From: Haliotis rubra | Taxonomy: Eukaryota | Assembly (NCBI RefSeq): GCF_003918875.1 | Contig: NW_025765195.1 | Location: 62,001 to 126,000, forward strand | Reading direction: 5' to 3' | Length of the DNA stretch: 64,000 nt | Part shown: in pieces, positions 33,676 through 57,672 of the stretch | Layout: the number at the start of each line of letters is the position of its first letter | Numbering within the stretch: the stretch's first letter is position 1 | Translations under genes and position numbers: made by a program | Notes under the pieces: model-generated | Told to the model about the DNA's origin: nothing | The model's input: the letters and a program-made list of their open reading frames with translations, nothing else | The model's database searches: none

Positions 33676-34659
33676 TTAATCATCGTGACGCTTACATTTC
33701 AGGATCCAATGTTTATTGGGGAGAATTTGATAATTGCAATGAAGATTTTTAAAATTAACAGACATAATACAAGGTCAATAAAGAACATATTGAAGTAAGT
33801 TTCCATCCAACAGTACAGCGGCTCATGCCCGCTTACCCAGCAGATTAGGGGGATTTACAGCAATGCTTGGTTGACTGTGGACATGTTGAGCCTCCCATTG
33901 AAATATGTTCCAGGTCAGCCAGCCGGCCAGGGGGATTAGTGCTTAGGGCTCACCTGATGAGGGAGCTGGCTTACAAGTGTTCACCACCTACAGCCAAAGT
34001 GACATGACAGCAGACACCATTATTCCTCTAATTTATTGTATGTTCCATTACACTCAAGTTGGGTGGGGAAAATGTGCAAAAATGTGGTTTAGTGACATGA
34101 TACAAGGACAACAGTGATGTTGGGCTGTTGGTGAGGATAGCTATGACCTTTCGACTGGTTCCTGTGTACATTGTCTGTGACGTGTGGTTCCATACCCCAG
34201 AAAATGCTCAACCCTGTGACAGCAGCTTCACCAACTACGTGACAACCTACTGGGTGGAGGGTGAACAACCATGTAGAGGGGCGACACAGAAAGCTGGATG
34301 TGTTGATGGAGAGCCACCCCAAAATCTACAAAATCATAGATTTTTCTTAAGAAGGAACAGGCCTTGATCGAATCCTGTATTTTTCAACTGCAAGGTGGTG
34401 CCAGGCCACCAAATAGAACACATAGATACATTCAACATTTCCATTGACGATCCTGTTTCGCGCCTTAACAGCGTGTTAATGTCAACTTGTGATGAAATCG
34501 TAAATAAAATGGTGATAATTTACACCTTTTTCTTCTTTGCTGGGGGACCAAATCTCAAAGGGAACTAAATTACAGGCGCACCCTTTGTTCTTGGGATTAC
34601 ATTGCTTCACTGATCTGGCACCTTAGAACAAAAGCTGCTGGGTACGCAGGAAGAACCCC

Positions 34660-35190
34660 ATCTAATTACTGGAACACCTGCTCCGTTCAGTAATCACAAC
34701 AGTACAACATCTAACTACTGGAACATCTGCTCTGTTCAGTAATCACAACAGTACAACATCTAACTACTGGAACATCTGCTCTGTTCAGTAATCACAACAG
34801 TACATCATCTAACTATTGGAGCATCTGCTCTGTTCAGTAATCACGACAGTACATCTAACTACTGGAGCACCTGCGCTGTTCAGTAATCACAACAGTACAA
34901 CATCTAACTAGTAGAGCACCTGCTCTGTTCAGTAATCACGACAGTACAACATCTAACTATAGGAGCACCTGCTCTGTTCAGTAATCACAACAGTACAACA
35001 TCTAACTAGTAGAGCACCTGCTCTGTCCAGTAATCACGACAGTACATCTAACTACTGGAGCACCTGCTCTGTTCAGTAATCACAATAGTACAACATGTAA
35101 CTACTGGAGCACCTGCTATGTTCAGGAATCACCAAAGTACAACATCTAACTACTGGAGCACCTACACTGTACAGAAATCACAACAGTACG
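34660..35190. repeat. 46-50-bp minisatellite (modal 49 bp), ~11 copies
   Basis: Unit CATCTAACTACTGGAGCACCTGCTCTGTTCAGTAATCACAACAGTACAA. Confidence 0.94.
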
Positions 35191-35809: not shown

Positions 35810-38800
35810 TTAATATAGATAACTGGTCAGTGTAGGATGCCCTCCCATCTCAGCTACACTTACGATGTCCTCATTACTGTCTGTCAGAAGTGTCAGGTCA
35901 GCTTTGTGCTGTATTAGGAGGTCAACCACATCTTTATGTCCAAAGAAGGCAGCCTTCAATACAGGTGTGTATCCATGTGTCCCTCTACTGTTGATGTTAG
36001 AAGGAGACAGGAGAGGCGTGTTCAGAACCGCGAGCGCCCGCGATCGCTCGCGAGCGCTCGATCCTGAACGCCTGTGACCGTGCGAGCGCCCGCGCGCGCA
36101 CGCGAGCCATCCCCACAGCTGCCTCGCCAAGCGAACCAAGATGGCGACCAACACGGAGACGGTAGAAGAGGTGGTGCTGCAAAACCCCACAGGCACAAAA
36201 TGTTACACTCTGTTCGTTCCCACGTCACTGAGGATCTATGCCGACACTGATAAGCGAACTGTTCAACCGTGAAACAGTCACGCAGTGGATGTTATGAGGC
36301 TGTGCTATGATGGAATCCTGAGCAAACGCGTCACCTCACACGCGTGGTCATTGCCTGCCACTGTCACAAGTGAAGGACACTGCATTAATACAGCATCTGC
36401 AATGTTTAATGTTGTAGCTCGTTGACAGCTACAATTTATGATTGTGCATTAAGGGTTTAAAATGTCCATGTCATATGTACAGGCTATGAAGAAAACATTA
36501 TGAATGTACACATTGGTGAGAGTCCTTCCCGTTCCCCCATCCCAAATAATATTCATAAATATACTAAAATTATGAACAAAACTGAACACAACAATGACTA
36601 GAGAACTCACAAAATGAATAAAAGTCCAATATTGAAGTTAGGGTTAGGTTGAAGTTGAGGGTTAGGTTTAGCGTTAAGTTGAGAGGCAGGTGTAGGGTTG
36701 GGGGAAATGAAGGAACCCTTCTCTTCGTATCTGTGATGAAAAGATGTGAAATTGTGAATAATGAATTTACAGAAGCTTCTGTGGCCCATAACAATGTCCA
36801 ATAATTGGTAATTGCTAAGACATTGGTATGGTTTTCACTACGTCCAGGCACTTCAGCTGCCATCTACAATTACCTCCAGAGAATCTATCCAGTGGATGAG
36901 ACAGGATGCAAAAAATTGTGTGAGTAAATAATGATTTGACATCTGTGCGTATTGAAATGTGATGTGTGATAACTGTGTACATAATGTCAACTGTCAGAAA
37001 TGCATACAAGGTTGCTACAGTGTCTACTGTCTGATCCCACAATTCAAAAGTATTGATTTACATATATATATGTGTATTTGTTGCAGTACTGACGCAGTCA
37101 CTGCAAGTCTTAGCAGACCTCGGGCTGCTACAGACATGGTCAGCCATGGCCAAGGGCAGTGGAGTTGCCTTAGGCAAACATGCCACCTTTGATCAACTGT
37201 CTCAGGCTGCCTATAGCCGAGATGTTGATGACGATGTTCTCGGTACACTGGGTGCAGTTGCGCCCAATCACCTCACTGCGCAGGAGAAAGTCAGATTCAT
37301 GGAGATTGGTGTGGCTGCACTTCCCAAGGGTGAGTTAGTTGTATTGCGATATCCACTCAAGTAACACTAGTGAATGATCTGAGGAGTGTTATAGAGAAAA
37401 GGCAAGCGGAAACGTAAATCATTTCTGAATGGTTCCATCGGTGAATACTGCAATGTCCTTGTAGAGACAGAATCAAGAGCGTCCACACCAACGCAGCAAC
37501 CAGAGATGCTACCAATCATCAAAAACTGAGGACATCCAGATGTTGCAACACCGAAGCACCCAGGGCCTCCTCAGCGCCTCCGGCACCCAGCACCTCCTCT
37601 GCACCACCAGCAAGGGGCCTCCTCAACTCCTCCGGCACAGGACCACCATTTCAGCTGAAGGTTTGGTTTTACCTATAGAATAGCCTTTATGCAATGGGTA
37701 TAGTATTTTTAAAAAGTTTGAATACAAGTAGTACAGCTACTACTACCATATCATATTTGTAATACCAATAGTTGAAGTCACTGGGGAAGTGAGGTTGTGG
37801 AATGCACTTTGAGCATGCCCCGTAATGATGTGACAAATAGCTCTATATGAATATGATCATCATTACATCGCCCACTCTGCCTCTTGGGTACCCATTCACT
37901 GCTGTGTGAACAGAGGCATATGGTGAGTGAAGCCCTTTACCCAATGTGATACAACACGTTTATCAACACATGTCTGTGTATCTCACCACTGCAACATTGA
38001 CAGCGATGTATGTACATTATGTAACACTTGTGTGAATCTTGTATTAACAACGAAGGAGCAGGGAATGTTTTTTTGTTGAGGAGAAATATTGTGTTGTCAT
38101 GTCACAGTTGCCACTGGTGCGGGGGATATTGATGACTTTGTCTACGTGTTGATGACGTTTTCAAATTTAACATCATTCTCATATTTTCATTTAGCTTTTG
38201 CATTGACAATGATTACACCTCTTTTTTAAACCTCACTGCTTCATTACAGGCCATGCAAGAGAAGAAGGGGATGAAGGTATGTTAATTGCATCAAAGGGCA
38301 GTTATATGCAATGCAGAACATTTGTATTCAGTTCATACACGTTTGAGTTGCATTCCATAAGCCGATTGATATGATAGTCTTTTGTCTGCTTTAGTACCAA
38401 GTCACATGCGGTCAGTGTGAGTGTGTGTGTATTGAAGAATTCAAGAAAACAATAACAACATATGAGTGATTTGGCATCCTTTCATTGATCCTTCCTGTAC
38501 TTGGAATGTATATTTGTTGATGACTTGAGTAATTTGTGACTAATCTTTAACCATTACAGATGATCTGCAGTCACAGGCTGGGACAGAGACTGAACAAAAA
38601 CGTAAGAGGATTGTGTTGTACATTACCACCATCATTACCACAGAACATTGTACGAACATGATTATCCAGTCTTGTGTATATGCAACAGTTCCTCGTCATC
38701 TGGGCTCCTCTGTGGCATATGTAGATAAAATAAAATGTTTAAAGAATATGTCGAGTGCATATTATTGTTATGTTAGTAACTCATGACTCTAACAGGAGAT

Positions 38801-41800
38801 GTACATCTACACAAATCCTACTGTCTCTCAATGACTCTTATTTCTCCCACAGAACACATTAATTGCTGCTGGCAATAGGTTTCCTTTGTATGCAGAAATG
38901 TATGTTTGACAGCTTTTGCAATGTTATGATGGTGAATGGGTTCTGCATTTCCAGTATACTGGAGCCATGCAGCAGTTCTGCTCCTCATAGATCTGAGACA
39001 GAGACTGCAACACCTCTTCAGCAGCACTACAGTGTCCATGAAGCAGGCATGGAAATCTGTTGCAGATCGGATGAGTGAAAAGGGTTTTCACTTCACAGGA
39101 CCTGAATGTGACAGGAAATTCCGCAGCATGAAGTCAAGGTATTTTAAATCATGCACTAGTTGCAGCATTACAGCTGAATTTTCAATGTCAATATATGCTC
39201 ACTGAATAGGCACACACTTGTTAATGTTGGGAACACAACAAACCTATTCTTATCCACATATTGAGACATCCGACATGATGGATCTATGAAAATACAGTAA
39301 CAACAGAACAGAACAGGATGATGCTTTCATCTGTTCAATGCAATGTTGTTAGCACACTACATGCTTCACTTACATACAATTGGAAGCGTATACTGACTAC
39401 GACTCATCCAAATGCACCTTTCTCATTGTTGGTTGATTTCTATCACCATCAAGAATATTGACTTATCAGAGATTGACACAATAGAACGGAACTGGACTAA
39501 TTATGAGCTTGCATGTGCCATTCATTTTGATATTCCTCTCACATTAATGACATAATTTTAATGTCCAGACACCGGACCATTGTGGGGCGCAACAAGACAA
39601 CTGGGAGTGGCCGATCAACATGGCGCTATTTCTCAGTAATGGAACATCTCACACAGGGCGACCCTGCAGTGGAGCCACTCGCTCCTGTTGGTAGCTTGCC
39701 CACCACACATACACAGGAGAGGAGTAGTGTGGATGGGGAAACAGTGGCAGAAGAACCCCCAGCTACTGCAGCTCCCAGACGGAGGAGATCCTCATCCGGT
39801 GACAGGATGGAGTCAGCAATCACTGCTCTGAGGAGAGACCTCCTCACCATGCATCAGGAGAGGATGGAGCTAGAGACTAGGAGGGTGGTGGCGTTGGAGA
39901 GTATTGCGCAATTCTTGAAAGAAAAACATAAATAAAGTCATCATCATTGCACATGTACCTTGTTCAGTCATTCTTTTATTCATTTTGACATTTAAAGTAA
40001 TCAGTACTCGTCATGCATGGACATTCAGTGGCCATCGTTATGTCTTTCACACAAAAACTTCTAAATGTACACGTGTCTTTTCCATCTGCTGTGGACATTA
40101 TCAGTCTATGACAGCAGTTGCGTTATCTATTGTCTTTTGTTCACACCCGACTGGTGCTCACTGGGTGAAGTTCCTGTTGTGCCCTCAGTGTCCGTCCCAT
40201 CCACATCAATGTCCTCATCCACAAATGACTCCCTGTTGATGACAAAGTTATGCAGGACACAGCATGTCACAATGACTAATGGGATTTCTCGGACGTTCCT
40301 CATGTCCAAATATTTCAGTTTGCGAAATCTGCCCTTCAGTAGTCCGAAACACCGTTCGATATCGACTCTTGTTGAGCTGTGAACTGAATTGTACCTCTTC
40401 TCGTCGGCAGTCAGGTGGCCGTTGTCCCTATACGGCACAAGCAAATAAGTTAACAAGGCATATGCAGAATCACCAAGAAGGTGATACTCCTCGGGTAATG
40501 GTTCATTCGCCAATAAATTTGCTATTGGAGAGTTTTTGAATACACGAGAGTCGTGTACAGATCCAGGATATGCAGCAAATACATCCAAAAATTTGAGTTT
40601 GTTGTCACACACACCCTGTAAATGAAATGCGGGAAATCCTTTTCTGCATATGTAGGAGTCTCTGAAATCACGAGGTCCTGGAATGGGAATGTATGTTCCA
40701 TCAAGACAACCAATGGCTCCAGGAAATCCATATTTTACAGCATTCTGTTCAGCAATGGCTCTATATTCCTCTTTCCGAGGCCATGTAATTTGCCTGGGTA
40801 GAATATCTTCACTGGTCATTGTCCTACAGAAGTTCATCAGGTAGTACCGTAAGGAACCCTTGCTCATGCCAAAACGATCCACGACATTTCGGAAGGTCTC
40901 TTGATTGCTGACATACCAGAGGCAAGCCAGCGTTCTCCTCTCCAGACTGATGTTTTTGACTTCAGTGTGCGGTCCAATGAGTTCCAGCAAGTCCTGAGCA
41001 CAGAAAAATTATTTCATAGTAACAACATGTTGTTTTACATGAAGCGCATAATTCAATTTATGTATCATGCTTTCGAACACTGTCATAGACAGCATGTGTT
41101 TATTCAAATTTCTTTGCAAGCAATGACACACATGCAGGGATGTGGATTATCGGTACTTGGCTCAAATGGTTCATATCGTGTATCATTATCGTACATATTT
41201 CATCAATGTCGACATGAACATTTACCTCAAACATATCGATATCAATTTGTATCATGCAATGAACAGACATTTCCTCACATGAATACATTTTGTCAATCGT
41301 GGCACCAGTTTCCGCAAACAAAACAAAAAACTGGAGCTCACAGGCATGCATGTATTCAGTCAGTAACTTATTTACCTGAAAGGATGCTCTCGTCATCCTG
41401 AAGTGGGCTCGAAACAGAGGATCGCTGTAGCGGGGCACCGTTTCTTCTACGTAAATTTCAATACGGTTGGTTCCCAGGAGCTTCTCATGTCTCATCACAG
41501 CGTTGTGTTCCTAAATGGTTAATGCAGCAGACACTGCATTATCACAATATGATGTATCCATCGGTTCAGATAGTTCGCTTATTGCTACTTCCAACACACA
41601 CTCTTCTTCCAGTTGCGCCGCCATTTTGTTTGTTGTCACCGAGCGCTCGTGTCCGTTCAGGGCCTATGCGAGCGTTCGCGGGAGGCAATCGCGCGGGCGC
41701 TCGCGGTTCTGAACACGCCTGAGGTGTTGTACTATAGCAGTGTTCCCACCCTGACAGGCAAGATGAAGTAAACTATCACCAGATGTAGACACCAGTGTCA

Positions 41801-44800
41801 GGTCAGCTTGGTTGGACACAAGGAGGTCAAACATACTTTGATGTCCACTGACAGCTGCCATCATCGCTGGCGTCCAGCCATGCATCCCTCTACTGTTGAT
41901 GTTAGAAGGAGACAGGAGGGGTTGTACTATAGCAGTGTTCCCACCACGACAGGCAAGATGAAGTAAACTATCACCAGATGTATCCACCAGTGTCAGGTCA
42001 GCTTGGTTGGACACAAGGAGGTCAAACACACTTTGATGTCCACTGACAGCTGCCACCATGGCAGGCGTCCTTTCAAGCTGACCTCTACTGTTGATGTTAG
42101 AGGGAGAAAGGAGGTGTTGTACTATAGCAGTGTTCCCACCCTGACAGGCAAGATGAAGTAAACTATCACCAGATGTAGACACCAGTGTCAGGTCAGCTTG
42201 GTTGGACACAAGGAGGTCAAACATACTTTTATGTCCACTGACAGCTGCCATCATCGCTGGCGTCCAGCCATGCATCCCTCTACTGTTGATGTTAGAAGGA
42301 GACAGGAGGGGTTGTACTATAGCAGTGTTCCCACCCTGACAGGCAAGATGAAGTAAACTATCACCAGATGTAGACACCAGTGTCAGGTCAGCTTGGTTGG
42401 ACACAAGGAGGTCAAACACACTTTGATGTCCACTGACAGCTGCCACCATGGCAGGCGTCCTTTCAAGCTGACCTCTACTGTTGATGTTTGAAGGAGACAG
42501 GAGGTGTTGTACTATAGCAGTGTTCCCACCACAACAGGCAACATGAAGTAAACTATCACCAGATGTAGACACCAGTGTCAGGTCAGCTTGGTTGGACACA
42601 AGGAGGTCAAACATACTTTGATGTCCACTGACAGCTGCCATCATCGCTGGCGTCAAGCCATGCATCCCTCTACTGTTGATGTTAGAAGGAGACAGGAGGG
42701 GTTGTACTATAGCAGTGTTCCCACCCTGACAGGCAAGATGAAGTAAACTATCACCAGATGTAGACACCAGTGTCAGGTCAGCTTGGTTGGACACAAGGAG
42801 GTCAAACACACTTTGATGTCCACTGACAGCTGCCACCATGGCAGGCGTCCTTTCAAGCTGACCTCTACTGTTGATGTTTGAAGGAGACAGGAGGTGTTGT
42901 ACTATAGCAGTGTTCCCACCACAACAGGCAACATGAAGTAAACTATCACCAGATGTAGACACCAGTGTCAGGTCAGCTTGGTTGGACACAAGGAGGTCAA
43001 ACACGCTTTGATGTCCACTGACAGCTGCCATCATCGCTGGCGTCCAGCCATGCATCCCTCTACTGTTGATGTTAGAAGGAGACAGGAGGTGTTGTGCTAT
43101 AGTAGTGTTCCCACCCTGACAGGCAAGATGAAGTAAACTATCACCAGATGTATCCACCAGTGTCAGGTCAGCTTGGTTGGACACAAGGAGGTCAAACACA
43201 CTTTGATGTCCACTGACAGCTGCCACCATGGCAGGCGTCCTTTCAAGCTGACCTCTACTGTTGATGTTTGAAGGAGACAGGAGGTGTTGTACTATAGCAG
43301 TGTTCCCACCCTGACAGGCAAGATGAAGTAAACTATCACCAGATGTAGACACCAGTGTCAGGTCAGCTTGGTTGGACACAAGGAGGTCAAACACGCTTTG
43401 ATGTCCACTGACAGCTGCCATCATCGCTGGCGTCCAGCCATGCATCCCTCTACTGTTGATGTTAGAAGGAGACAGGAGGTGTTGTGCTATAGTAGTGTTC
43501 CCACCACGACAGGCAAGATGAAGTAAACAATCACCAGATATATCTACCAGTGTCAGGTCAGCTTGGTTGGACACAAGGAGGTCAAACACACTTTGATGTC
43601 CACCGACAGCTGCCATCATCGCTGGCGTCCAGCCATGCACCCCTCTACTGTTGATGTTAGAAGGAGACAGGAGGTGTTGTACTATAGCAGTGTTCCCACC
43701 CTGACAGGCAAGATGAAGTAAACTATCACCATATGTAGACACCAGTGTCAGGTCAGCTTGGTTGGACACAAGGAGGTCAAACACACTTTGATGTCCACTG
43801 ACAGCTGCCATCATCGCTGGCGTCCTGCCATGCATCCCTCTACTGTTGATGATAGAAGGAGACAGGAGGTGTTGTACTATAGCAGTGTTCCCACCCTGAC
43901 AGGCAAGATGAAGTAAACTATCACCATATGTAGACACCAGTGTCAGGTCAGCTTGGTTGGACACAAGGAGGTCAAACACACTTTGATGTCCACTGACAGC
44001 TGCCATCATCGCTGGCGTCCTGCCATGCATCCCTCTACTGTTGATGATAGAAGGCGACAGGAGGTGTTGCACTATGGCAGTGTACCCACCCTGACAGGCA
44101 AGATGAAGTAAACTATCACCAGATATATCTACCAGTGTCAGGTCAGCTTGGTTGGACACAAGGAGGTCAAACACACTTTGATGTCCACCGACAGCTGCCA
44201 CCATGGCAGGCGTCCAGCCATGCATCCCTCTACTGTTGATGTTAGAAGGAGACAGGAGGTGTTGTACTATAGCAGTGTTCCCACCCTGACAGGCAAGATG
44301 AAGTAAACTATCACCAGATGTATCCAGCAGTGTCAGGTCAGCTTGGTTGGACACAAGGAGGTCAAACACACTTTGATGTCCACTGACAGCTGCCTTCATT
44401 GCTGGAGTCCTTCCATGTGTCCCTCTACTGTTGATGTTAGAAGGAGACAGGAGGTGTTGTACTATAGCAGTGTTCCCACCCTGACAGGCAAGATGAAGTA
44501 AACTATCACCAGATGTATACAGCAGTGTCAGGTCAGCTTGGATGGACACAAGGAGGTCAAACACACTTTGATGTCCACTGACAGCTGCCACCATTACTGG
44601 TGTCCAGCCATACTCACCTCTACTGTTGATGTTAGAGGGAGACAGGAGGTGTTGTAGTATAGCAGTGTTCCCACCACGACAGGCAAGATGAAGTAAACTA
44701 TCACCAGATGTAGACACCAGTGTCAGGTCAGCTTGGTTGGACACAAGGAGGTTAAACACACTTTGATGTCCACTGACAGCTGCCTTCATTGCTGGCGTCC

Positions 44801-47800
44801 ATCCATGTCTCCCTCTACTGTTGATGTTTGAAGGAGACAGGAGGTGTTGAACAACAGTAGTGTTCCCACCCTGACAGGCAAGATGAAGTAAACTATCACC
44901 ATGTGTATCAACCAGTGTCGGGTCAGCTTGGTTTGACACAAGGAGGTCAAACACACTTTGATGTCCACTGACAGCTGCCTTCATCAGTGGCGTCCATCCA
45001 TGTGTCCATCTACTGTTGATGTTAGAGGGGGACAGGAGGTGTTGTACTATAGCAGTGTTCCCACCCTGACAGGCAAGATAAAGTAAACTATCACCATATG
45101 TATCCACCAGTGTCAGATCAGCTTGGTTGGACACAAGGAGGTCAAACACACTTTGATGTCCATTGACAGCTGCCTTCATCAGTGGCGTCCAGCCATGTCT
45201 CCCTCTACTGTTGATGTTAGAAGGAGACAGGAGGTGTTGAACTATAGCAGTGTTCCCACCACGACAGGCAAGATGAAGTAAACTATCACCAGATGTATCC
45301 ACCAGTGTCAGGTCAGCATGGTTGGACACAAGGAGGTCAAACACACTTTGATGTCCACTGACAGCTGCCATCATCGCTGGCGTCCAGCCATGCATCCCTC
45401 TACTGTTGTAGTTAGAGTGAGACAGGAGGTGTTGTGCTATAGCAGTGTTCCCACCCTGACAGGCAAGATGAAGTAAACTATCACCAGATGTAGACACCAG
45501 TGTCAGGTCAGCTTGGTTGGACACAAGGAGGTCAAACACACTTTGATGTCCACTGACAGCTGCCACCATTACTGGTGTCCAGCCATACTCACCTCTACTG
45601 TTGATGTTAGAGGGAGACAGGAGGTGTTGAACTATAGCAGTGTTCCCACCCTGACAGGCAAGATGAATAATTCCATAGCAATATTTATCTTTCACATTCA
45701 AGTCTGATATTTTCCGTAGTAGCTCAAAACAACCATCTGATGCTGAAATTGCTGTAACCATGACAGGGGTTCGGCCATTCACATCAGCAGAGTTTATAAC
45801 ATTATCTCCAGGTTTCCTATCTAACAGGATTTTCAGGGATGTTTCCATTCCTATCTTACAAACCAGATGGAAGATGTTTTGAAAGTCCTTGTCTCTCGTG
45901 TTAACATCAGCACCTTCCTGGAGCAGATACACTAGAATATCGGAGCTGCCATTTTCCGCAGCTTGCAACAAGAGTCTGTTCAGTGTCAATTGTTGAACTG
46001 GTTTTTCAGAGCGAGTGAAGAGCCATTTCAATACTGTCACATTGTTGCTTTGTGCACACCCTTCCATAGCTTGACTGATCTCCTCTTGAGTGAACTCTTC
46101 TCCAGTTGTGTGTTCAATATCTGTAACTAGAAGTGCATTATGTCCAAGAACTGCCCAGTACAGAAAACATTTTCTTTTCTCTCTCCTGTGAAACCAAAGT
46201 TCATCTTTAGAATCAGTTTGATTATGCGGATGGTGGTGCTTTGTCCCATCACACTGAAGTTTGTTGAGCAGTTTTAAAGCTGTTGTGTCTCGTTTGAGAA
46301 CTGGATGTGTCACTGATTGAGAAAACTTTCCTTGTTTAATAGAATGTGCAAACCTTGTGGTAAGTAGGTCATCATAATTATCTGAGACATATATCAGATG
46401 GAGATGGTCATCAATTTTAGTTTCTTCAACCTTTTTACCTTGAACTCTTTCAAACAGAAAGTCATCACTACAGTTCTTCAAAACAAAGACTGGACTGATA
46501 TTGTACAAGGCACAGGCACAAGCATCATAGATTGAAGAATGGGCAAAGCCAACAGTGTCTCCTCTAGTGAAGAATGTACCTCTGAGACTTTTAGCTGCTT
46601 TGTACATGTCTGAACGTGTAGCTTTTGGCATCAGGTCTTGAACAGTTTTGACCATCATGTCCATTTCCTTGTCTTTATCTCCACTGTCTAACCTGGTCAG
46701 ATTCAATTTGTCTTCACACAGCAGCATCAGAACCAATATGGCCGATCTATCATTTCTATCTTCAAGTAACTGCTTTAGTTCTAATCTAAGATAAAATAGT
46801 GGTTCCTTGAAAAATGAATTTGCATTTTTAAAGAAAGAGGAAAATTCAAAACAAAGTTTACAAATGAGAGGAAATCCAAAAATGTTGGAACAGATTTCCA
46901 GCTCATTGTAATCTGGAATATGTTGCACAGAGCTGTCACCAAAGGCACGTTTATGTTGTTCATATATTGACTTTTTCTCTTTGTCAGAAAGCCTGTATTG
47001 TTCTTGTTTTTGTTAAGTCCACTACTGTTCGATCTCTTTGAACAATTTCAAACCCTCATACTGCAGTTTTTTGCAAGTCCATCGTGGAAATTGTATGATT
47101 TTGATGTGAAGACAACATGAATATCCTTTTGTTTGAGATTCTTTTAAATGTTGCATTTTCTTTCTGGATTCTTCAACAGGATCAACTGTTTTCACTCAAT
47201 TCTGACCGTTTTTCTTCTGCTTTTTGCTTTTTGTTTTAATTGTGGGAGAAGATTATTGAGAAAGTTTTTAACCTGTGAAGTATTAGCAGATACTCCAACT
47301 GTACCAAACAAATCATCCACAATGAGGAATACTTTTGAGTAAGTACTAAGACAGCGGTCAAAGTCAAACTTCTTAAGGCTGTCCACAAACACGACTTCGT
47401 ACCCCTTTTGTCTATACCTTGAACCCAGCATCAGAGCCATTGTTGTCTTGCCCTCTCCTGAAGCACCACAGATAGTCACATGACCAAATTCCTTCAATTT
47501 CTGTTTCACTTTTCTGTAGGCTTCAGTTGGAGCAAAAATCTTCCTTGCTTCATCTGTGCGTAAATCAAGGGTATCTGAAGGAATACAAAAACTGTTCACC
47601 ACACCAGGAAATACTAGGATGTTCACATAAAATGACAAAATATTTACCTATTTCATTGTGGTTGGAACCTTTTAGTCTTAATGACTGGAGATAGCTTCAT
47701 CTAGAACGCTGCCACAGTACTTTAAACTGAACAGGAAACACCTCTGTATTCTGACAAATGATTATGATTGTTGCACTGGTACGTGCTGCAGAACAAATAT

Positions 47801-50800
47801 AGCGAAACAAGAAGACATTTTCATAAATATCCCCTGCCAGTGTTCTGTTCCTATTAGCTCTGGGTTTTTTAACCCCACCACGACATACATGTCCTGAAAA
47901 CACATACATTTGGTTTCCCTATTTATTTGTATGACAGTTACTGAGAATTTCTGTTCCCATTGGGGATACCATGCACCGTCAAGTAAAAATGACAACGGCC
48001 ATAACTCTGTAAACAAATTGTAACACAGTTTCCGTTTTCAAAGTCCATCAAGGCATTCATGTCCTGAAAACACATACCGAAGTTGGTTTCCCTATCTATA
48101 ACGGTTTGAGAAAATCTGTCCCCATCAGCTCGGATATATGGACGGAGCTCAAATCTATATCCCCCTTCCACTTCAAGGCGGGAGATAATAAACACAGCTT
48201 GTGTGACAACTGTCTTCATTCATTGTTCCTAGGTAACCATACACAACATTATTCATTAAGAACTGAATGTCAGTTTTGATGGGTTCATCGCAGAGTGAAT
48301 GACTTGCATGTACTGTTTAAACTGTTTGAACCTCCTAGCTTGTGAGGAAAATGGCAAAATTTCACGTGATCAATTTCAAACAAAAATTCAACAGTTTGTG
48401 AAGTTTTCTCTTTGGTTATAGGTGTGTAAATCCAAATGGTAATAGTCTTGAACAAGATCTGGTCACTTACTGACCCTTCCTCCATCAACACTCACCTCTC
48501 CCCAGTGTTCCTTGTCCTGCCCCTCCAGTGACGATGTTGAGAATGTTGGCAGCTTGGGCATTCCCTGAACGCTGTTCACCTGTCAACACCAACCAGGAGG
48601 AAGAATCATCAGTAACCATGGTAACCATGGTAACAATGGTGTTTTCTTTCCACACTGAATAAAATATTTAATAATGTTGCAGAGCTTAAGAGTTCGGTGA
48701 ACATCATTCCAAAGATCCAGCTCAATCGATCTGGTCTTCTCTTCATCATAAAACTTACCAACTGATAACAACAGTTGATGATCAAAACATGTTCATCATG
48801 AATCAGGGTAAGATTCTTCACATTTAGTTCGAGAAGTAGAGACATTCTACTATACTCTGTGAAATCAGAGGGTCAAGGTACTTGTATGAGAAAGCTGTAC
48901 CACAAATTCAGCTGCTCAACTATCACTTGCTTTGATTTGCTATAGTTGAAAACATGGCTGCCCTGAACCTTGTCATTTCAATACCCTTCCTCAAGGAAGG
49001 CATATACCAATCTAAACAATGATGTGTATTAAACATAAGAGCATTTTCAAACTGTAAGTATGATAGTAACCAAATCTGAGAATCACTGGTATTATGATTT
49101 CCTGAGTTTACATGGGGCTGCTTAGCAAGACGAATTCTGTGTGAAGTCTGTACTGCAAGATAATGATCATTCGTGACCAACTCGTGTTATTCCGGGACAA
49201 GCCGAATAGCGACTCGTGCCCCTCTGGAAGGATTTCATATTGAACATCAGAACTACTTTAAACAAGAATGATAATTCTATTCCTGTTTGATGCCAATGGT
49301 ACTTAAAATCACCGAAGCACTCGTACATTGTATTGCTGTTTTTGTTTTTACTTATTTATTTTAAAGAACTAAACCTCTTTGATACAACTAAAACGATAAA
49401 AACATATTCTAAAGACATATTCTGACTTAATTATTACCAGCTGTTCCCCCCAGAGGAAATAATAAACAAATTTCAACAAGCCTGTTTCAAATTTGTATGG
49501 AAAGACAAACCTGATAAAATTAAAAGAGATGTAATTGCTATGCCACCTGAATATGAAGGAATTAGTGTCCCACTCATCAAGAATATTATTTATGCACACA
49601 AATATCATGGCTGAAGAGATTATATTCCAATAGCTGCAGATCGAGAGATGTACTCTCTGCATGCGGATTATATTTACAAAAGCAATATAAGACACTTAGC
49701 TCAATTGACATGTTAAACCAATGTATTTGGTTTAATTATATGTTTAACATAGGTAACGAGACAATGTTTATAAACAGTTGGTACAATGCAGGAATGCACT
49801 TTATTTATGACCTAATGAACCCAACTACAGGGGAATTCTATACTTATGAAGAACTACAAAAAAAATATATCAAGTTACAACATATATCTTAAGATATCAT
49901 AGTAGCAAATCTTCCATAATTGCCTGCTTAAAGAGAAGAAAATCACTCTTCCCAAAACACTACCATTTTCTCCAATACTACCACTCAATATATCCAAACT
50001 TAGTCTAAGGGTTAAAGGCTCCAAAACCTTTCATCTTTCTCTACTAGACCCCAATTACACTAAATCATATGCACATAAAGAGAGGGAAAGAGTCTTTGAA
50101 ACACAGCATGATAACACACTAACATCAGACACACGTTACTCACGTCGCTCGTATGATATGTTGATACGTTTAGACGACAATGGAGATATTAACTGGGCTT
50201 CGGCAGTACAATCAATATTATTTCAACATGGCTTTGCTAGAGTATGGATATATCAAAATATTGGAAACTGGGAATTGTTTTTAAATCTTTTCAAACAACG
50301 TTGTAAAGACATGTACTATCAAGAATGGACACAAGATATAAGAAACTCAAAATCATTACATTTGAATTCTGCCTTTAAATCTGATATTGTTCCGGAATTG
50401 TATTTGATTGCACTCTCTTCGTTACATCTGCGCAGAGTCTTAACAAAATTCAGATGCGGCTCCACCAATTTGAAAATAGTTTCATATAGAAGATCTTAAG
50501 ACAATGACATTAGTGTAGCTATGTGCGATTATTGTAAAAGCGTACCAGAAGATGTGTATCATGTGTTAATGAAATATCCTTTATATGTAGCGGTAAGAAC
50601 TCACTACATACCAAGTATCTGTATTATGAACCCAAATAAACAATTTTTTTTACATCTTCCAAATACTAAGAACCATAATATCCTACTCCGTCTAGCAATT
50701 TTTGTAAACAAAATCATGTCGATGTGCTCTGAAAAAGTTTGATCTAAGTTGTCATTTTGTACTAATGGCCTCATGGCCACATTCATGAAATAAACCTGTC

Positions 50801-53800: not shown

Positions 53801-56086
53801 TTATCGTCAGATAAAGTATCACGATTATTGATACTACGATATATCGTCACAGCTCTATTGTCATATCAGAAACAAATTGGTCCAGTATTTATAACATTTG
53901 TAACAGAATGGATACAGTAGTGGTTGTGGATAGAATAGCCACCATTAAAAACACAAGAGGATGTTTTCGGTAAAGAAAATCCTGGTAAACTTGGTATGTG
54001 GTACACATTTGGATATTTGTATGATTCCACACATTGAATTTCGGACAATATTGCAGTCATTTTGCGATTTTCAAAATTCAATCATTACTCCTATGTAATA
54101 AAGGGGCTAAGAACATCATTGAAATATTTGAACAATATATATCACATAGTTTCTGTGAAGAAGAATTTGGTATTATAACCTGTATTTCTCACTTAAACAA
54201 GCTGTTCTGGCAGCCAGTATTAATTGGTGAGAATTGAAATGTTTCCATATGAAATTGGAACAACATTGACAGTTTTGAACAAGTAAACAAGAACGGGGTA
54301 GATATACATCAAGAATACTAGTAACCCATGACAAAAATGTCAATCTGAATAAAAATTCAAATTACTGTTTGAATTGGAGCTTGATCCAGCTATTCAGTGT
54401 AATTACACAAATAAGATATCTCAAACAATTCAGTTTTTGTTGATGCATTACATTTTGAATAATGCCCCTAGGGGTATTTTATTTGAAATAAACAATCAGG
54501 GTGACAAAATGGAAGCCCAGTACAACGTGACACCAAGAATGAAGCATACAACTTTATGGATGACAATTTCTTATTTTTGCATACAGCGATGTTTGCATGT
54601 CGTTTGTTACACTGTTATCAGGCTGAAAGTGACTACAAATATGTGATGATAAGTATATATATATATACATAGACTAGTATGTTATGACAAGCAGCAGATT
54701 AACATTAACAACTGCATGTAATTTAAAGCTTAGATGCAACTAACAAAATAAACATAATTAAAACACAATTGTCACTTATTTATGACACATAATATACATT
54801 TTCGATTATGAAAAAACAAATAAACAAAATTATAAGCGTACAATCTCAAATCAAAAGTGCAATATTTTGTACTTGGGTATATTATCCTCGAAATAAAGCA
54901 TCCGGGGTACCGAACCCAGTCAGAGCGGGTGGGTATGCACTTAAGCGTAACAAAGTGTTTCATTGGCTGGTTCATTTGCCGATACACTCAGAGCTCTTTG
55001 TTTATGGTGTATAGCCTGATAGGTGTTGAGCTCAAATTGCATGTGGTCAGTGATTGAAGTTGTGCATTGCATATTGTCATTAGCAGACAGGCAGGCAGAC
55101 ACACAGGGGCAATAAAACAGACATTGAGTTTTGTCTGTGACAGAGGCTGCTTATCACAATCAACATGGTTTATTTTATGTAACGAGTAGATTATTTACTA
55201 TTTGTTATTTTTGTACAAAACCAAGATTAGACTACTCCTGCACACGACCTTATAATCCGGGCAGCCCGGTTCAAGCCGTGCAAACCTATTCACTGTGCAT
55301 GCGCTATGTGCACAGCAAGCACAGCTGTTGAAACCATTTTTCACCTCAGCTGGTTTTTAAGTGAATCGTTTGAACTCTGATTTTGCGGGATTTTTTTCAG
55401 CGCGTTATTTTTCAACTTTATAAGTTGAATTTGCATTTTTGATAATTTGTTACTGTAAGCAGGGTAACCCCATACCAAAAGGTATCAGAATCTGCAAAGT
55501 TATGTTTTGCGTTGCATGTAAGCTTTGATAACAAGTGACAGCAAATTCCGAAGGCTTCCAAAAGGTTTTAGTGGAATCCTGATTCTTAGTGGATAGGATT
55601 TCAACTTTGTCAAACTGGATTAGATGGTTAGTGAATTTTTGTTGGTGACCTGACATGGCAGATTTGCTGTTTGTCTTGATAATGGTGTATGAATCTACAT
55701 CGAAGCATTGCTCTATTCAATAAACAAGAAATTGTCATCCTAAAGTTATATGCTTCTTTTTGGACTCACCAACTTCGAGATTGTTGATCAAACCAACAGT
55801 GACACCCACCTGTATTTAGTGTGATTGCTTGGCTCTCTAGGTCAAGGACCTCCTCGTGCTCAGCTGAACCTGCTTGTACCAAGTGACCTTCATGTTCCTC
55901 GTCTGAACTGGTATCAACATCAGAAACAGGTAAGTCACTTCTCAAAGCTGACATGTCCATGTGACCTTCAGGTGGTCCACTGGAAGGGGCCACGTGACCT
56001 TCAGGCTGCCCACTGGAAGGGGCCACGAGACCTTCAGGTTGCCCACTGGAAGTGGCCATGTTGTCTTCTGGCTGCCCACTGGACAT
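35810..56086 (-). CDS. NLR-like STAND NTPase (nSTAND3-like) plus ankyrin-repeat protein. Exons 56086-55810, 48579-48496 and 47574-35810. The last exon is interrupted by the Harbinger element and has clustered frameshifts near 47.0-47.2 kb.
   Basis: Walker A (HVTICGASGEGKTT) and Walker B (FLIVDDLFG) in ORF 47192-47638. The helical region (GFPLICKL...FAHSSIYDAC) and ankyrin array are in ORF 41664-46928. The capping repeat and stop are at 36013-35810. All three exons join in phase 1 at canonical GT/AG sites. The two 5' exons are less certain than the main exon. Confidence 0.8.
36141..39935 (+). CDS. Harbinger accessory Myb/SANT-like (trihelix-type) DNA-binding protein. Firm exons 38955-39138 and 39569-39935; probable exons 37087-37329, 38250-38276, 38560-38601; tentative exons 36141-36249 and 37465-37660.
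   Basis: YWSHAAVLLLIDLR...AWKSVADRMSEKGFHFTGPECDRKFRSMKSR|HRTIVGRNKTTGSGRSTWRYFSVME is a typical Myb/SANT-like domain, followed by a C-terminal coiled coil. Splice phases agree. The exon 1 donor reads ATAAG instead of GTAAG and exon 37465-37660 is out of frame, so this copy may be defective. Confidence 0.8.
40106..41624 (-). pseudogene. Harbinger DDE transposase (HARBI1-like, DDE_Tnp_4). Exons 41624-41376 and 40993-40106, with two in-frame TAG codons.
   Basis: Motifs FRAHFRMTRASF, GCLDGTYIPI, YPGSVHDSRVF, LLGDSAY, RVDIERCFGLLKGRF and CCVLHNF; the DDE triad is intact. Phase-0 GT-AG intron. Stops at 41513-41511 (codon 38) and 40129-40127 (seven codons before the probable natural end). Confidence 0.92.
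41724..45670 (-). repeat. Coding tandem array of 195-bp units (65 aa, two ankyrin repeats). 20 complete units plus the start of a 21st that continues beyond the transposon.
   Basis: The unit HLACQGGNTAIVQHLLSPSNINSRGxxGxTPxMxAAVSGHQSVFDLLVSNQADLTLVxTSGDSLL was counted in the 1754-aa ORF. Units are near-identical at DNA level. Confidence 0.97.
49380..51330 (+). mobile_element. Decayed L1/Tx1-like LINE 3' region with a nested 3' fragment of another LINE (RTE-X-like, ~50140-50800)
   Basis: The outer pieces read FKFVWKDKPDKIKR and CTFC..ETIVHLFC (zf-RVT). The inner piece reads WASAVQSILFQHGF..FKQRCKDMYYQEW..LTKFRCGS..CDYC..EDVYHVL, then AATAAA and a (CTGT)n tail. Confidence 0.7.
51485..53035 (+). 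mobile_element. Decayed L1/Tx1-like LINE, RT C-terminal half to zf-RVT
   Basis: LGQYADDT (RT catalytic motif), SGLKINIDKT, LTLIGKITVIKTLALSKL and CSLCNDSVETLCHVYWEC, with several frameshifts. Confidence 0.88.
53574..53857. mobile_element. hAT-like MITE rich in CGATA motifs
   Basis: TAGAGATGTGAC...GTCACAGCTCTA termini; the TSD is degenerate. Confidence 0.65.
54727..55524. mobile_element. Second, shorter and inverted copy of the 2713-3784 Kolobok-like family
   Basis: TTAA|AGCTTAGATGCAAC...GTTGCATGTAAGCT|TTGA. The interior is the reverse complement of parts of 2713-3784; the spurious ORFs 3533-3739 and 54772-54987 match. Confidence 0.85.
55530..55750. mobile_element. Penelope-like remnant: inverted GIY-YIG fragment plus pseudo-LTR-like end
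   Basis: The minus strand reads KSAMSGHQQKFTNHLIQFDKVEILS. It is followed by CTTGATAATGGTGT..CTACATCGAAGC..AATAAA, which resembles 6748-6830. Confidence 0.5.
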
Positions 56087-57269: not shown

Positions 57270-57672
57270 ACTTGCCAGGTTATCCATGTGTTCCCTCTTA
57301 TCCGCTCTTGCCAGGTTATCCATGTGTTCCCTCTTATCCGCTCTTGCCTGGTTATCCATGTGTTCCTTCTTATTCGCTCTTGCCAGGTTATCCATGTGTT
57401 CCCTCTTATCCGCTCTTGCCTGGTTATCCATGTGTTCCCTCTTATCCGCTCTTGCCAGGTTATCCATGTGTTCCCTCTTATTCGCTCTTGCCTGGTTATC
57501 CATGTGTTCCTTCTTATCCGCTCTTGCCAGGTTATCCATGTGTTCCCTCTTATCCGCTTTTGCCAGGTTATCCATGTGTTCCCTCTTATCCGCTCTTGCC
57601 AGGTTATCCATGTGTTCCCTCTTATCCGCTTTTGCCAGGTTATCCATGTGTTCCCTCTTATCCGCTCTTGCC
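57270..57672. repeat. 36-bp tandem array (~11 copies) amplified inside the RTE coding sequence (ARADKREHMDNL)
   Basis: Unit TTGCCAGGTTATCCATGTGTTCCCTCTTATCCGCTC. Confidence 0.95.

What the first reader, a model, noticed from the sequence alone, without database searches (positions are those of the whole stretch)
35810..47574. NLR-like STAND-ankyrin receptor with a homogenised repeat array that varies mainly at binding-surface positions
Seen: a P-loop NTPase followed, in one exon, by about 21 x 195-bp units. The scaffold (NTAIVQHLLSPSNINSRG, HQSVFDLLVSNQADLTL) is nearly invariant. Substitutions concentrate in hairpin and inner-helix slots: RG[EY/MH/RH/TH/VH/QL][G/E][W/R/L/Y]TP[V/A/L]M[V/M/K], C[Q/R/C]GG and L[V/L][S/D/Y][T/I][S/Y/H]G. 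Established: these slots correspond broadly to the concave ankyrin binding face (largely the residues randomised in DARPins). Fungal NLRs such as HET-E generate specificity through concerted evolution and shuffling of near-identical repeats with hypervariable positions. Inference: this may be an animal, probably molluscan, nSTAND3-ANK immune sensor diversified by repeat shuffling. It is the best candidate for an undescribed system in the window.
Basis: partly seen in the sequence, partly recalled or inferred. Interest (0 to 1): 0.85.

Follow-up and report, generated by a model that had tools for sequence, protein, structure and literature searches.

The report
Abalone STAND-ankyrin receptor gene, damaged copy
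This is one copy of a large abalone-specific family of NLR-like switch proteins whose long ankyrin arrays vary mostly at the residues ankyrin repeats use to bind targets; the pattern fits a fast-evolving recognition receptor, but this copy is broken as assembled.

Summary
On the minus strand, a three-exon gene encodes a P-loop NTPase that matches Pfam nSTAND3 (68.8 bits, cut-off 27.2). A helical domain follows, then 20 in-phase 195-bp units. Each unit is two ankyrin repeats, and units average 92% nucleotide identity. The genome is an abalone (Haliotis): more than 50 paralogues share this architecture, with best identity of 86% to H. asinina.

I fixed 12 test positions in advance, the ones randomised in DARPin libraries. 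At these positions pN/pS is 1.7 in this array and 2.5 and 3.9 in two intact paralogue arrays. At the other 53 codons it is 0.3-0.55. Pooled minimal changes are 44 N : 3 S against 77 N : 61 S (Fisher 7e-7). Across 586 units from 42 proteins, the seven most variable positions are all DARPin positions.

This copy is damaged as assembled. Six copy-specific small insertions, +8 nt in total, break the frame within 240 bp of the NTPase. An intact-looking 5.7-kb Harbinger transposon splits the last unit. The insertions could be assembly errors.

An immune role is inferred, not shown. The scan had already met this family, the transposon and the 390-bp periodicity on this genome.

The parts
55810..56086 (-). 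Exon 1: ATG plus an acidic low-complexity N-terminus (SSGQPEGH-type repeats). It ends at a GT donor, phase 1.
   Evidence: tblastn to P0015 residues 12-114. Frame, ATG and donor were read. Spliced translation.
48496..48579 (-). Exon 2 (84 bp): a short conserved peptide (GEQRSGNAQAANILNIVTGGAGQGTLGR) just upstream of the NTPase, with AG/GT splice sites, phase 1.
   Evidence: The motif is conserved, in variant forms, across the Haliotis subfamilies. No Pfam family matches it.
47195..47574 (-). Start of exon 3: the nSTAND3 NTPase core with Walker A (GASGEGKTT) and Walker B (LIVDD). The reading frame from the ATG is open up to the stop codon at 47194-47192.
   Evidence: Pfam PF20720, E 5.5e-19, 68.8 bits. 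Acceptor at 47575-47576. Spliced ORF of 247 aa.
47000..47239 (-). Damaged patch. Six copy-specific insertions (+1, +1, +1, +2, +2, +1 = +8 nt), mostly in A runs. They fall in the lineage-specific helical insert and the following core strand (DIHVVFTSKSYN). The result is in-frame stops and a net frameshift relative to the array ORF.
   Evidence: tblastn frames. DNA alignment to two intact H. asinina paralogues that agree with each other at all six sites. No frameshift at 37 other homopolymer runs of 4 or more in the coding sequence.
45981..46999 (-). Helical (STAND arm-like) domain between the NTPase and the repeats. It is under purifying selection: pN/pS is 0.34-0.37 against intact paralogues.
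   Evidence: AF2 model of the paralogue region, pLDDT 86.3. Foldseek hits to Avs5, NLRP and SAMD9.
45594..45980 (-). Divergent N-terminal ankyrin repeats leading into the array.
   Evidence: Pfam Ank_2/Ank on ORF residues 317-414. Helix pairs in the AF2 model.
41721..45593 (-). Array of 20 in-phase 195-bp units, each two ankyrin repeats. Units 12-20 form a 390-bp higher-order repeat. Unit 20 is cut after codon 56.
   Evidence: Selection statistics.
36014..41720 (-). PIF/Harbinger DNA transposon, 5707 bp. It has perfect 29-nt terminal inverted repeats, a DDE_Tnp_4 transposase (about 41498-40127, minus strand) and a Myb/SANT-like ORF (38936-39205, plus strand). It adds an 18-residue tail and a stop (41666-41664) to the array ORF.
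   Evidence: Inverted repeat I1. Pfam E 1.2e-34 and 2.4e-14. Junction sequences.
41721..41723 (.). Target-site duplication GAG (CTC on the gene strand), copy 1. It also serves as codon 56 of unit 20.
36011..36013 (.). Target-site duplication GAG, copy 2.
   Evidence: Removing the element and one copy restores the unit sequence and frame.
35810..36010 (-). Displaced 3' end of the gene: the last 9 codons of unit 20, a divergent C-terminal capping ankyrin pair, and the original stop (35812-35810).
   Evidence: ORF 35810-36196. Pfam Ank. It matches the C-termini of P0015, P0011 and P0007.

Best explanation
The locus is one paralogue of an abalone-specific, greatly expanded family of STAND (NLR-like) proteins.

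Architecture: a short N-terminal peptide, an nSTAND3 P-loop NTPase, a helical arm and a long ankyrin solenoid built from 65-residue two-repeat units.

Shown:
- The arrays grow and turn over by tandem duplication of one- and two-unit blocks.
- Units are mosaic.
- Amino-acid replacement is concentrated, with pN/pS above 1, at the hairpin-tip and inner-helix positions (2, 3, 5, 10, 13, 14 of each repeat). These positions form the canonical ankyrin binding groove.
- The rest of the unit and the helical domain are under purifying selection.

Inferred: the array is a ligand-recognition surface. By analogy with other STAND proteins, ligand binding would release the NTPase for nucleotide-dependent oligomerisation and downstream signalling. 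The family would then be a germline repertoire of recognition receptors, most plausibly for pathogens or other non-self.

This copy is defective as assembled. Six small insertions break the NTPase reading frame after 247 codons. A recently inserted Harbinger element cuts off the C-terminal cap. The intact 1754-codon array ORF and the normal pN/pS of the helical domain mean any inactivation is very recent, or that the six insertions are assembly errors.
For: Architecture:
-.

Family and taxon:
- 74 hits, 56 of them Haliotis, nearly all carrying PF20720 plus Ank families.
- 408 representative clusters. The strong ones I sampled are all Haliotis; the weak ones are scallops.

STAND class:
- Pfam nSTAND3 scores 68.8 and 72.5 bits against a cut-off of 27.2.
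- An AF2 model (pLDDT 86.3) has Foldseek top hits EfAvs5 (6e-5), NLRP2, NLRP9 and SAMD9.
- Bacterial Avs5 carries the same Pfam domain.

Ankyrin solenoid:
- phmmer against the PDB reaches 1e-63.
- AF2 gives pLDDT 96.2.
- Foldseek matches DARPins and ankyrin-1/B.

Surface-focused diversification:
- pN/pS at the 12 a-priori positions is 1.68, 2.46 and 3.88; at the other codons it is 0.48, 0.30 and 0.55.
- pS at those positions is not raised.
- Minimal changes are 44N:3S against 77N:61S, Fisher 7e-7.
- A binomial test for an excess of N gives 0.0046, and permutation gives 0.002.
- In 586 units from 42 proteins, the top seven entropy positions are all DARPin positions, Mann-Whitney 6e-6.
- All of the 12 most variable positions lie in the pre-helix loop or helix 1, none in helix 2.

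Turnover:
- Units cluster mostly by array. There is a 390-bp higher-order repeat with 96-100% identity.
- Within-array pS of 0.10-0.11 is below the between-gene value of 0.15-0.20 in two arrays.
- The Hudson-Kaplan bound gives at least 10 recombination or recurrent-mutation events (Rm = 10) within 195 bp.

Damage:
-.
Against: - I have no functional, expression or ligand data, so 'immune receptor' rests on analogy.
- In this window's array alone, pN/pS above 1 at the surface positions is not significant by itself (17 N : 2 S). The significance comes from the contrast with other codons and from pooling three arrays, which may share inherited variants.
- My counts are Nei-Gojobori and minimal-state counts, not recombination-aware codon models.
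- About two thirds of replacements lie outside the 12 positions.
- One intact paralogue array (L001) is no more homogeneous than the genes are similar to each other.
- The structural similarity of the NTPase core alone is generic AAA+/ASCE, Z 12-13.
- The six insertions are clustered, all are insertions, and most are in A runs. Unverified notes from other windows of this genome report homopolymer indels in otherwise intact elements. An assembly artefact is therefore a live alternative for that part.
Confidence: 0.72

Rival explanations
1. The gene is functional. The six small insertions are homopolymer or low-complexity assembly errors. The Harbinger insertion is real but merely replaces the C-terminal cap with an 18-residue tail, or it is confined to one haplotype. 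The animal would then make a working receptor from this locus.
For: - The insertions are tightly clustered (240 bp), all are insertions, and four sit in A or T runs.
- The 1754-codon ORF is intact.
- The helical domain shows the same pN/pS (0.34-0.37) as the intact paralogues show with each other, 0.36.
- Exons 1-2 and all splice sites are intact.
- Unverified notes on other windows of this genome report homopolymer indels in otherwise intact elements.
Against: - 37 other homopolymer runs of 4 or more in the same coding sequence carry no frameshift.
- Two of the insertions are 2-nt, and one of these is not in a homopolymer.
- The patch also carries extra substitutions.
- The transposon junctions are clean, with a duplicated target site, so that lesion is not an artefact.
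Confidence: 0.35
2. The family is not a recognition receptor. It is a structural or scaffolding ankyrin protein, as its database names suggest (ankyrin-like, ANKRD17-like, phosphatase-6 regulatory subunit-like). The variable positions are simply the least constrained surface residues, drifting under relaxed selection in young tandem duplicates.
For: - NCBI names.
- The closest solved ankyrin matches are cytoskeletal ankyrins and NOMPC.
- Replacements also occur outside the surface positions. The outer helix (helix 2) has 27 N: 15 S.
Against: - Nearly every member carries an nSTAND3 NTPase, which PP6 regulatory subunits and ankyrins lack.
- pN/pS at the a-priori positions exceeds 1 in all three arrays, with 44 N: 3 S, while pS there is not raised. 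Relaxation alone would give about 1 at most.
- Several of these codons carry 3-6 different amino acids reached by multi-nucleotide changes.
- Dozens of paralogues with 6-33 units are typical of arms-race families.
Confidence: 0.12
3. The apparent array structure (unit number, identical units, 390-bp periodicity) is partly an assembly artefact of collapsing or expanding near-identical repeats. Inferences about recent duplication and shuffling in this copy would then be unreliable.
For: - Units 15 and 17 are identical and units 9 and 10 are 99% identical. Repeats this similar are hard to assemble.
- One H. rubra locus has more than 30 predicted isoforms of different length, which hints at mapping trouble in such arrays.
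Against: - Most units differ by 5-15% and are individually recognisable.
- There are no indels or frame breaks across 3.9 kb.
- Independent assemblies of three other species show the same unit and the same variable positions.
Confidence: 0.1

Closest known systems
[quoted passage not shown] 2014, PMC4986451
   Same: - A STAND NTPase is followed by near-identical superstructure-forming repeats.
- A few hypervariable positions are under positive selection on the concave face (inner helix and hairpin for ANK).
- Repeat number varies.
- There is evidence of unit exchange.
   Different: - The nucleotide-binding domain here is nSTAND3, not NACHT or NB-ARC.
- The unit is a two-repeat 65-aa module.
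- The host is an animal. That paper found highly conserved repeats in only 0.8% of metazoan ANK/TPR/WD proteins.
- No N-terminal effector domain is recognisable, only a short peptide.
- Allelic repeat-number polymorphism and an incompatibility or immune phenotype are untested here.
Bacterial Avs5 / AVAST type 5 (SIR2-nSTAND3-TPR/Sel1/PPR anti-phage STAND proteins; PDB 9jap, 9nc9)
   Same: - It has the same Pfam NTPase family, PF20720.
- It is the best Foldseek match to the abalone NTPase-helical model.
- It has the same tripartite logic, with a C-terminal helical-repeat sensor.
   Different: - Avs5 has a SIR2 NADase effector; the abalone proteins have none recognisable.
- The sensor repeats are TPR-like, not ankyrin.
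- Sequence identity is about 13%.
- The abalone NTPase carries a helical insertion of roughly 50 residues after Walker B.
Canonical metazoan NLRs (NACHT-LRR; NLRP/NLRC) and cnidarian NACHT-ankyrin proteins
   Same: - STAND architecture with a C-terminal repeat sensor.
- Lineage-specific expansion in marine invertebrates.
- NLRP2, NLRP9 and NLRP3 are among the top structural matches.
   Different: - There is no NACHT profile match and no LRR.
- There is no PYD, CARD, Death or TIR effector domain.
- High unit-to-unit identity of the repeats is not a described feature of those families in the literature I could search.
Designed ankyrin repeat proteins (DARPin libraries)
   Same: A near-constant consensus scaffold with variation at positions 2, 3, 5, 13, 14 (and 33). 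The seven most variable family positions coincide with these. DARPin fusions are among the top sequence and fold matches.
   Different: - The abalone proteins are natural and germline-encoded, with up to 33 two-repeat units rather than 2-3 internal repeats.
- They additionally vary position 10 of both repeats, and position 1 of the second repeat.
- Position 14 of the second repeat and position 33 are nearly fixed.
PIF/Harbinger DNA transposons
   Same: A DDE_Tnp_4 transposase plus a separate Myb/SANT-like DNA-binding ORF, terminal inverted repeats and a 3-bp target-site duplication.
   Different: The duplicated target is GAG/CTC rather than the TWA often quoted for the superfamily (from my own knowledge). 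It is a passenger in this gene, not part of the receptor.

Membership tests
nSTAND3 STAND NTPase (Pfam PF20720) | Profile match above the curated gathering score | tested here: met
   68.8 bits against a cut-off of 27.2 for window 47638-47192. 72.5 bits for the intact paralogue P0015.
nSTAND3 STAND NTPase (Pfam PF20720) | Walker A (GxxGxGKT/S) and Walker B (hhhhDD) motifs | tested here: met
   GASGEGKTT and FLIVDD in the spliced reading. G38, G41, G43, K44, D88 and D89 are nearly invariant across 40 relatives.
nSTAND3 STAND NTPase (Pfam PF20720) | NTPase followed by helical/winged-helix arm domains as in solved STAND proteins | tested here: inconclusive
   Foldseek top hits are STAND proteins (Avs5 6e-5, NLRP2 2.9e-4, NLRP9, SAMD9, Dark), but TM-scores are low at 0.2-0.4. 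VIA-align scores the core alone equally well against generic AAA+ proteins, Z 12-13. Only Avs5 aligns across residues 3-560.
nSTAND3 STAND NTPase (Pfam PF20720) | Uninterrupted coding sequence in this copy | tested here: not met
   Stops and frameshifts from six insertions. The spliced ORF ends after 247 aa.
Ankyrin repeat solenoid | Ank profile matches, the 33-residue helix-turn-helix-hairpin register, and a confident solenoid model | tested here: met
   Pfam Ank_2/Ank/Ank_4. The GxTPLH register aligns to ankyrin-1/2. AF2 pLDDT 96.2 with regular helix pairs. Foldseek E around 1e-18 to DARPins and ankyrins.
Fungal-type NLRs with highly internally conserved repeats | Internal repeat identity above about 85% | tested here: met
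   TRF 91% matches. Mean 92.4% nucleotide identity among the 20 units.
Fungal-type NLRs with highly internally conserved repeats | Positive selection at a few positions on the binding face | tested here: met
   pN/pS of 1.7-3.9 at a-priori positions against 0.3-0.55 elsewhere. 44N:3S; binomial 0.0046. These are counting methods, not codon models.
Fungal-type NLRs with highly internally conserved repeats | Repeat-number polymorphism among alleles or individuals | not testable with these tools
   Only variation between paralogues could be seen: 6-33 units in 42 proteins.
Fungal-type NLRs with highly internally conserved repeats | NACHT or NB-ARC nucleotide-binding domain; fungal host | tested here: not met
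   Pfam gives nSTAND3, with no NACHT or NB-ARC hit. The host is Haliotis. This is an analogue, not a member.
Canonical animal NLR (NACHT-LRR) | NACHT domain and leucine-rich repeats | tested here: not met
   No PF05729 or LRR family among the Pfam hits of the window pieces or of P0015.
Protein phosphatase 6 regulatory ankyrin subunit (the name given by NCBI to many relatives) | An ankyrin-only scaffold without an NTPase module | tested here: not met
   The relatives so named carry PF20720 nSTAND3. The name reflects ankyrin similarity only.
PIF/Harbinger transposon (the insertion) | DDE_Tnp_4 transposase, Myb/SANT-like second ORF, terminal inverted repeats, 3-bp target-site duplication | tested here: met
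   E 1.2e-34 and 2.4e-14. 29-nt perfect inverted repeats. GAG duplicated at 36011-36013 and 41721-41723.

The most novel reading that the evidence does not exclude
Abalone carry an animal counterpart of the fungal NLRs with highly conserved repeats. It would be a germline 'natural DARPin library': dozens of nSTAND3-ankyrin genes whose two-repeat units are continually duplicated, exchanged and selected for new groove residues. That would give each species, and perhaps each haplotype, a distinct set of intracellular recognition specificities for pathogens or non-self. Clusters of such genes would help explain the haplotype-divergent, ankyrin-rich chromosome regions reported in Haliotis (PMC12627906).
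Probability: 0.35. Interest if true: 0.72.

Novelty: new variant of a known kind. Interest (0 to 1): 0.52.

Why it matters
If the family really senses ligands through its hypervariable ankyrin groove, three things follow.

- The 'conserved scaffold plus a few hypervariable contact residues plus repeat shuffling' solution would have arisen in an animal STAND family as well. It is already known from fungal NLRs, from lamprey VLRs, and by design from DARPins.
- This family uses an NTPase clade whose only characterised members are bacterial anti-phage Avs5 proteins.
- It would give abalone immunology and aquaculture genetics a concrete, highly polymorphic candidate receptor family. That family is currently hidden behind misleading 'phosphatase 6 regulatory subunit' and 'ankyrin-like' names.

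The present copy matters less. It is a damaged member that mainly shows how fast the family turns over.

Tried and rejected
- **Intron across the damaged patch.** I looked for an intron that could splice it out. No canonical donor-acceptor pair restores the frame, and any such intron would delete the conserved core strand.
- **Uniform homopolymer error.** I tested whether this could explain the frameshifts. There are none at 37 other runs of 4 or more, against several in 11 runs within the patch. That argues against a uniform error rate but cannot exclude a locally bad region.
- **More paralogue DNA.** I tried to fetch it for selection tests. P0007, P0005 and P0016 are not on record, so only L001 and L002 were used.
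- **VIA-align re-scoring of Foldseek hits.** It did not separate STAND from generic AAA+ for the NTPase core.
- **Four-gamete test on synonymous sites only.** Only three informative sites exist, so it cannot separate recombination from recurrent selected mutation.
- **Literature searches.** I searched for nSTAND3, mollusc STAND-ankyrin, concerted evolution of ankyrin repeats in invertebrates, and the NCBI protein name in abalone. I found no description of this family's architecture or variability. I found only general notes on ankyrin-gene expansion.
- **N-terminal peptide as an amyloid/RHIM-like motif.** I considered this and left it, because an earlier follow-up in this scan found no support.
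- **Concave-face geometry.** I could not compute it, because model coordinates are not returned. The mapping rests on the DSSP helix assignment plus the standard ankyrin register.

Full report
**What is there**

The feature lies on the minus strand. Tandem Repeats Finder reports one array at 41721-45667: period 195, 20.2 copies, 91% matches, no indels. It sits inside a 1754-codon ORF, 46928-41664. Anchoring on the INSR motif gives 20 units at exactly 65-residue spacing. Each unit is a 33-residue ankyrin repeat (A) followed by a 32-residue one (B).

Unit-to-unit nucleotide identity averages 92.4% (range 85-100%). Units 12-20 alternate between two types, which is a 390-bp higher-order repeat. 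Units 15 and 17 are identical, and units 9 and 10 are 99% identical.

**Gene model**

By homology to intact relatives the gene has three exons.
- Exon 1 is 56086-55810. It holds the ATG and an acidic low-complexity region.
- Exon 2 is 48579-48496. It encodes an 84-bp conserved peptide.
- Exon 3 starts at 47574.

The splice sites are canonical and both introns are phase 1. Exon 3 begins with a P-loop NTPase carrying Walker A (GASGEGKTT) and Walker B (LIVDD). It matches Pfam nSTAND3 at 68.8 bits, against a cut-off of 27.2. A helical domain of about 340 residues follows, then divergent ankyrin repeats, then the array.

**Whose gene**

The ORF's non-repeat part finds 74 proteins, 56 of them from Haliotis. 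Identity is up to 86% to H. asinina and 79-82% to H. rufescens and H. cracherodii. Nearly all hits carry PF20720 plus Ank families. Many are named 'serine/threonine-protein phosphatase 6 regulatory ankyrin repeat subunit-like' or 'uncharacterized'.

An exhaustive profile-free search with the NTPase-helical part of an intact paralogue finds 408 clusters at 50% identity. Every strong cluster I looked up is Haliotis. Weak ones are from scallops, and a distant Mytilus relative carries a HEPN domain in front of nSTAND3. The family is therefore essentially an abalone-specific expansion of a molluscan nSTAND3 lineage.

**Is the NTPase STAND-class?**

The sequence evidence is clear. An AF2 model of P0015 residues 141-700 was built on a 40-sequence alignment and is confident: pLDDT 86.3, pTM 0.82.

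Foldseek's best PDB matches are STAND proteins:
- EfAvs5 SIR2-STAND, E 6e-5
- NLRP2, E 2.9e-4
- NLRP9
- SAMD9
- lower down, NLRP3, Dark and a STAND-TPR protein

TM-scores are low. VIA-align scores the core alone just as well against generic AAA+ ATPases (Z 12-13). Only Avs5 aligns across the whole model. I therefore count the structural test as consistent but not decisive. Bacterial Avs5 anti-phage proteins are annotated with the same Pfam domain, which makes them the closest characterised relatives of the NTPase.

**The ankyrin part**

Three units match ankyrin-1/2 and NOMPC at E around 1e-63, in the standard GxTPLH register. A 325-residue AF2 model has pLDDT 96.2. In unit coordinates its helices are:
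- repeat A, inner helix: 7-14
- repeat A, outer helix: 17-25
- repeat B, inner helix: 40-47
- repeat B, outer helix: 50-56

Foldseek returns extended DARPins and the ankyrin-1/B solenoids.

**Where the variation sits**

To avoid circularity I fixed the test set before counting. It is the positions randomised in DARPin libraries (2, 3, 5, 13, 14, 33 of each repeat, from my own knowledge of that design). In unit coordinates these are 2, 3, 5, 13, 14, 33, 35, 36, 38, 46, 47 and 65.

*This window's array*
- pN/pS is 1.68 at the 12 test positions and 0.48 at the other 53 codons.
- Synonymous divergence is the same in both classes (0.093 and 0.099), so a mutational hotspot is excluded.
- Minimal changes are 17 N : 2 S against 26 N : 18 S (Fisher 0.02).
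- Permutation of positions gives 0.0026.

*Two intact H. asinina paralogues whose DNA I could fetch*
- The ratios are 2.46 against 0.30, and 3.88 against 0.55.

*The three arrays pooled*
- Minimal changes are 44 N : 3 S against 77 N : 61 S (Fisher 7e-7).
- The excess of N over the neutral expectation gives a binomial p of 0.0046.

*Protein level, 586 units from 42 Haliotis proteins*
- Ranked by within-array entropy, the positions run 46, 2, 14, 3, 36, 13, 5, then 10, 43, 38, 35, 34.
- The first seven are all DARPin positions (Mann-Whitney 6e-6).
- The next ones are position 10 of both repeats and the hairpin of repeat B.
- None of the top twelve lies in an outer helix.

*Caveats*
- These are counting methods.
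- The arrays may share inherited variants.
- In this window alone, omega above 1 is not significant on its own.
- About two thirds of all replacements lie outside the 12 positions, at a lower density.

**Homogenisation and shuffling**

In a tree of the 40 units, those of L002 are monophyletic, those of L001 nearly so, and the window's form a few clades.

| Comparison | Synonymous divergence (pS) |
|---|---|
| Among units, window array | 0.098 |
| Among units, L002 | 0.111 |
| Among units, L001 | 0.196 |
| Units, between arrays | 0.15-0.20 |
| Non-repeat domain, between genes | 0.16-0.20 |

Two arrays are thus clearly younger than their genes, and one is not.

Within the window's units, 164 of 435 informative site pairs fail the four-gamete test, and the Hudson-Kaplan bound is at least 10 events (Rm = 10). 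With only three purely synonymous informative sites, recombination cannot be separated from recurrent selected mutation. Recent tandem duplication of one- and two-unit blocks is shown. Exchange between units is likely but not proven.

**State of this copy**

Two lesions are present.

*Lesion 1: a Harbinger transposon in the last unit*
- A 5707-bp PIF/Harbinger element (36014-41720) sits in unit 20.
- It has perfect 29-nt inverted repeats, a DDE_Tnp_4 transposase (E 1.2e-34) and a Myb/SANT-like ORF (E 2.4e-14).
- The duplicated GAG target lies at 36011-36013 and 41721-41723.
- Removing the element and one target copy restores the unit and its frame.
- The displaced 3' end (36010-35810) still encodes the rest of unit 20, a divergent capping repeat pair and the stop. 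It matches the C-termini of intact paralogues.
- As it stands, the ORF runs into the element and ends after an 18-residue foreign tail.

*Lesion 2: six small insertions in the NTPase*
- The window carries six insertions (+1, +1, +1, +2, +2, +1) between about 47239 and 47000. The two intact H. asinina paralogues agree with each other at all six sites.
- The insertions fall in a lineage-specific helical insert of the NTPase and in the following core strand.
- They create stops, and the array ORF is out of frame with the P-loop. The spliced reading frame ends after 247 residues.

*Real mutations or assembly errors?*
- Against a uniform assembly error: no frameshift occurs at 37 other homopolymer runs of 4 or more in the same coding sequence.
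- For an artefact, or a very recent event:
  - The insertions are clustered, all are insertions, and most are in A runs.
  - The 5.2-kb ORF has no stop.
  - The helical domain shows normal purifying selection, 0.34-0.37 against 0.36 between intact genes.
  - Unverified notes on other windows of this genome mention homopolymer indels in otherwise intact elements.

I put about 60-65% on the insertions being real. The transposon insertion is secure.

**How it most likely works**

Shown: the architecture, the family expansion, the surface-focused excess of replacements, and the unit turnover.

Inferred by analogy with STAND proteins (Avs, NLRs, fungal NLRs):
- The ankyrin groove binds a ligand.
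- Binding releases the NTPase for nucleotide-dependent oligomerisation.
- A signal leaves through the N-terminal part.

No effector domain is recognisable there, only a short conserved peptide encoded by its own exon. An earlier follow-up in this scan found no evidence tying that peptide to amyloid signalling. No expression or functional data exist for the family in the literature I could search. There are only general remarks that ankyrin-repeat genes are expanded in abalone, enriched on a haplotype-divergent chromosome, and in one case more highly expressed in heat-resilient animals.

**Comparison and novelty**

The closest functional analogue is the fungal NLR class with highly conserved ANK, TPR or WD repeats and positive selection on the concave face (PMC4986451). 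That study found such repeats rare in metazoan proteins (0.8%).

The abalone family is not a member of that class. It has a different nucleotide-binding clade and it is an animal family. It also fails the tests for a canonical NACHT-LRR NLR and for a PP6 regulatory subunit.

I rate it a new variant of a known kind. An nSTAND3 NTPase is joined to arrays of a two-repeat ankyrin unit, and those arrays are diversified at the positions protein engineers chose for DARPins. The proteins themselves are already in public annotation. The same scan had already noted the family, this transposon and the 390-bp periodicity. This copy is damaged. Together these keep the score moderate.

Noticed in passing
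window 48496-48579 (-), and paralogues: The peptide just upstream of the NTPase has its own 84-bp phase-1 exon. It is conserved in variant forms across all Haliotis subfamilies (for example ..LNIITGQAGQGTLG....TQNIFTGPTPAGTVGE....YVNISTGQMVPGTVGE..). Some paralogues carry it two or three times in tandem. No Pfam family matches it.
   Followed up: partly
P0015 residues ~240-290 (L001), window ~47235-47100: The abalone subfamily has a helical insertion of roughly 50 residues, rich in charged residues, between Walker B and the next core strand. As a result the nSTAND3 profile matches only positions 1-98 of 155 in P0015, but 1-153 in the more distant P0050. All six frame-breaking insertions of this copy fall in or just after this A-rich insert.
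   Followed up: partly
window 36632-36696, inside the Harbinger element: Short degenerate telomere-like (TTAGGG-type) tandem repeats lie near one end of the transposon.
   Followed up: no
window 61387-61866 (-) and 51513-51995 (+): Two other mobile-element remnants are present. One is a weak DDE_Tnp_4 (Harbinger-type) fragment, E 8.6e-5, below the Pfam cut-off. The other is a reverse-transcriptase fragment (RVT_1, E 3.6e-7) inside intron 1 of the receptor gene.
   Followed up: partly
window 17262-17982, 24014-25570, 27710-28674, 34659-35189, 57093-57809: Several minisatellite arrays, including 49 bp x 11 at 34659-35189, produce long spurious ORFs in several frames on both strands.
   Followed up: no
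H. rubra LOC124266880 (cluster of P0191): One related locus has more than 30 predicted isoforms, 1241-1512 residues long. This may reflect read-mapping or splicing ambiguity inside near-identical ankyrin units rather than real isoforms.
   Followed up: no
P0066 (Mytilus edulis): A distant bivalve relative joins a DZIP3-like HEPN domain to the same nSTAND3 NTPase. In other molluscs this NTPase clade therefore does carry a recognisable nuclease-type effector.
   Followed up: no
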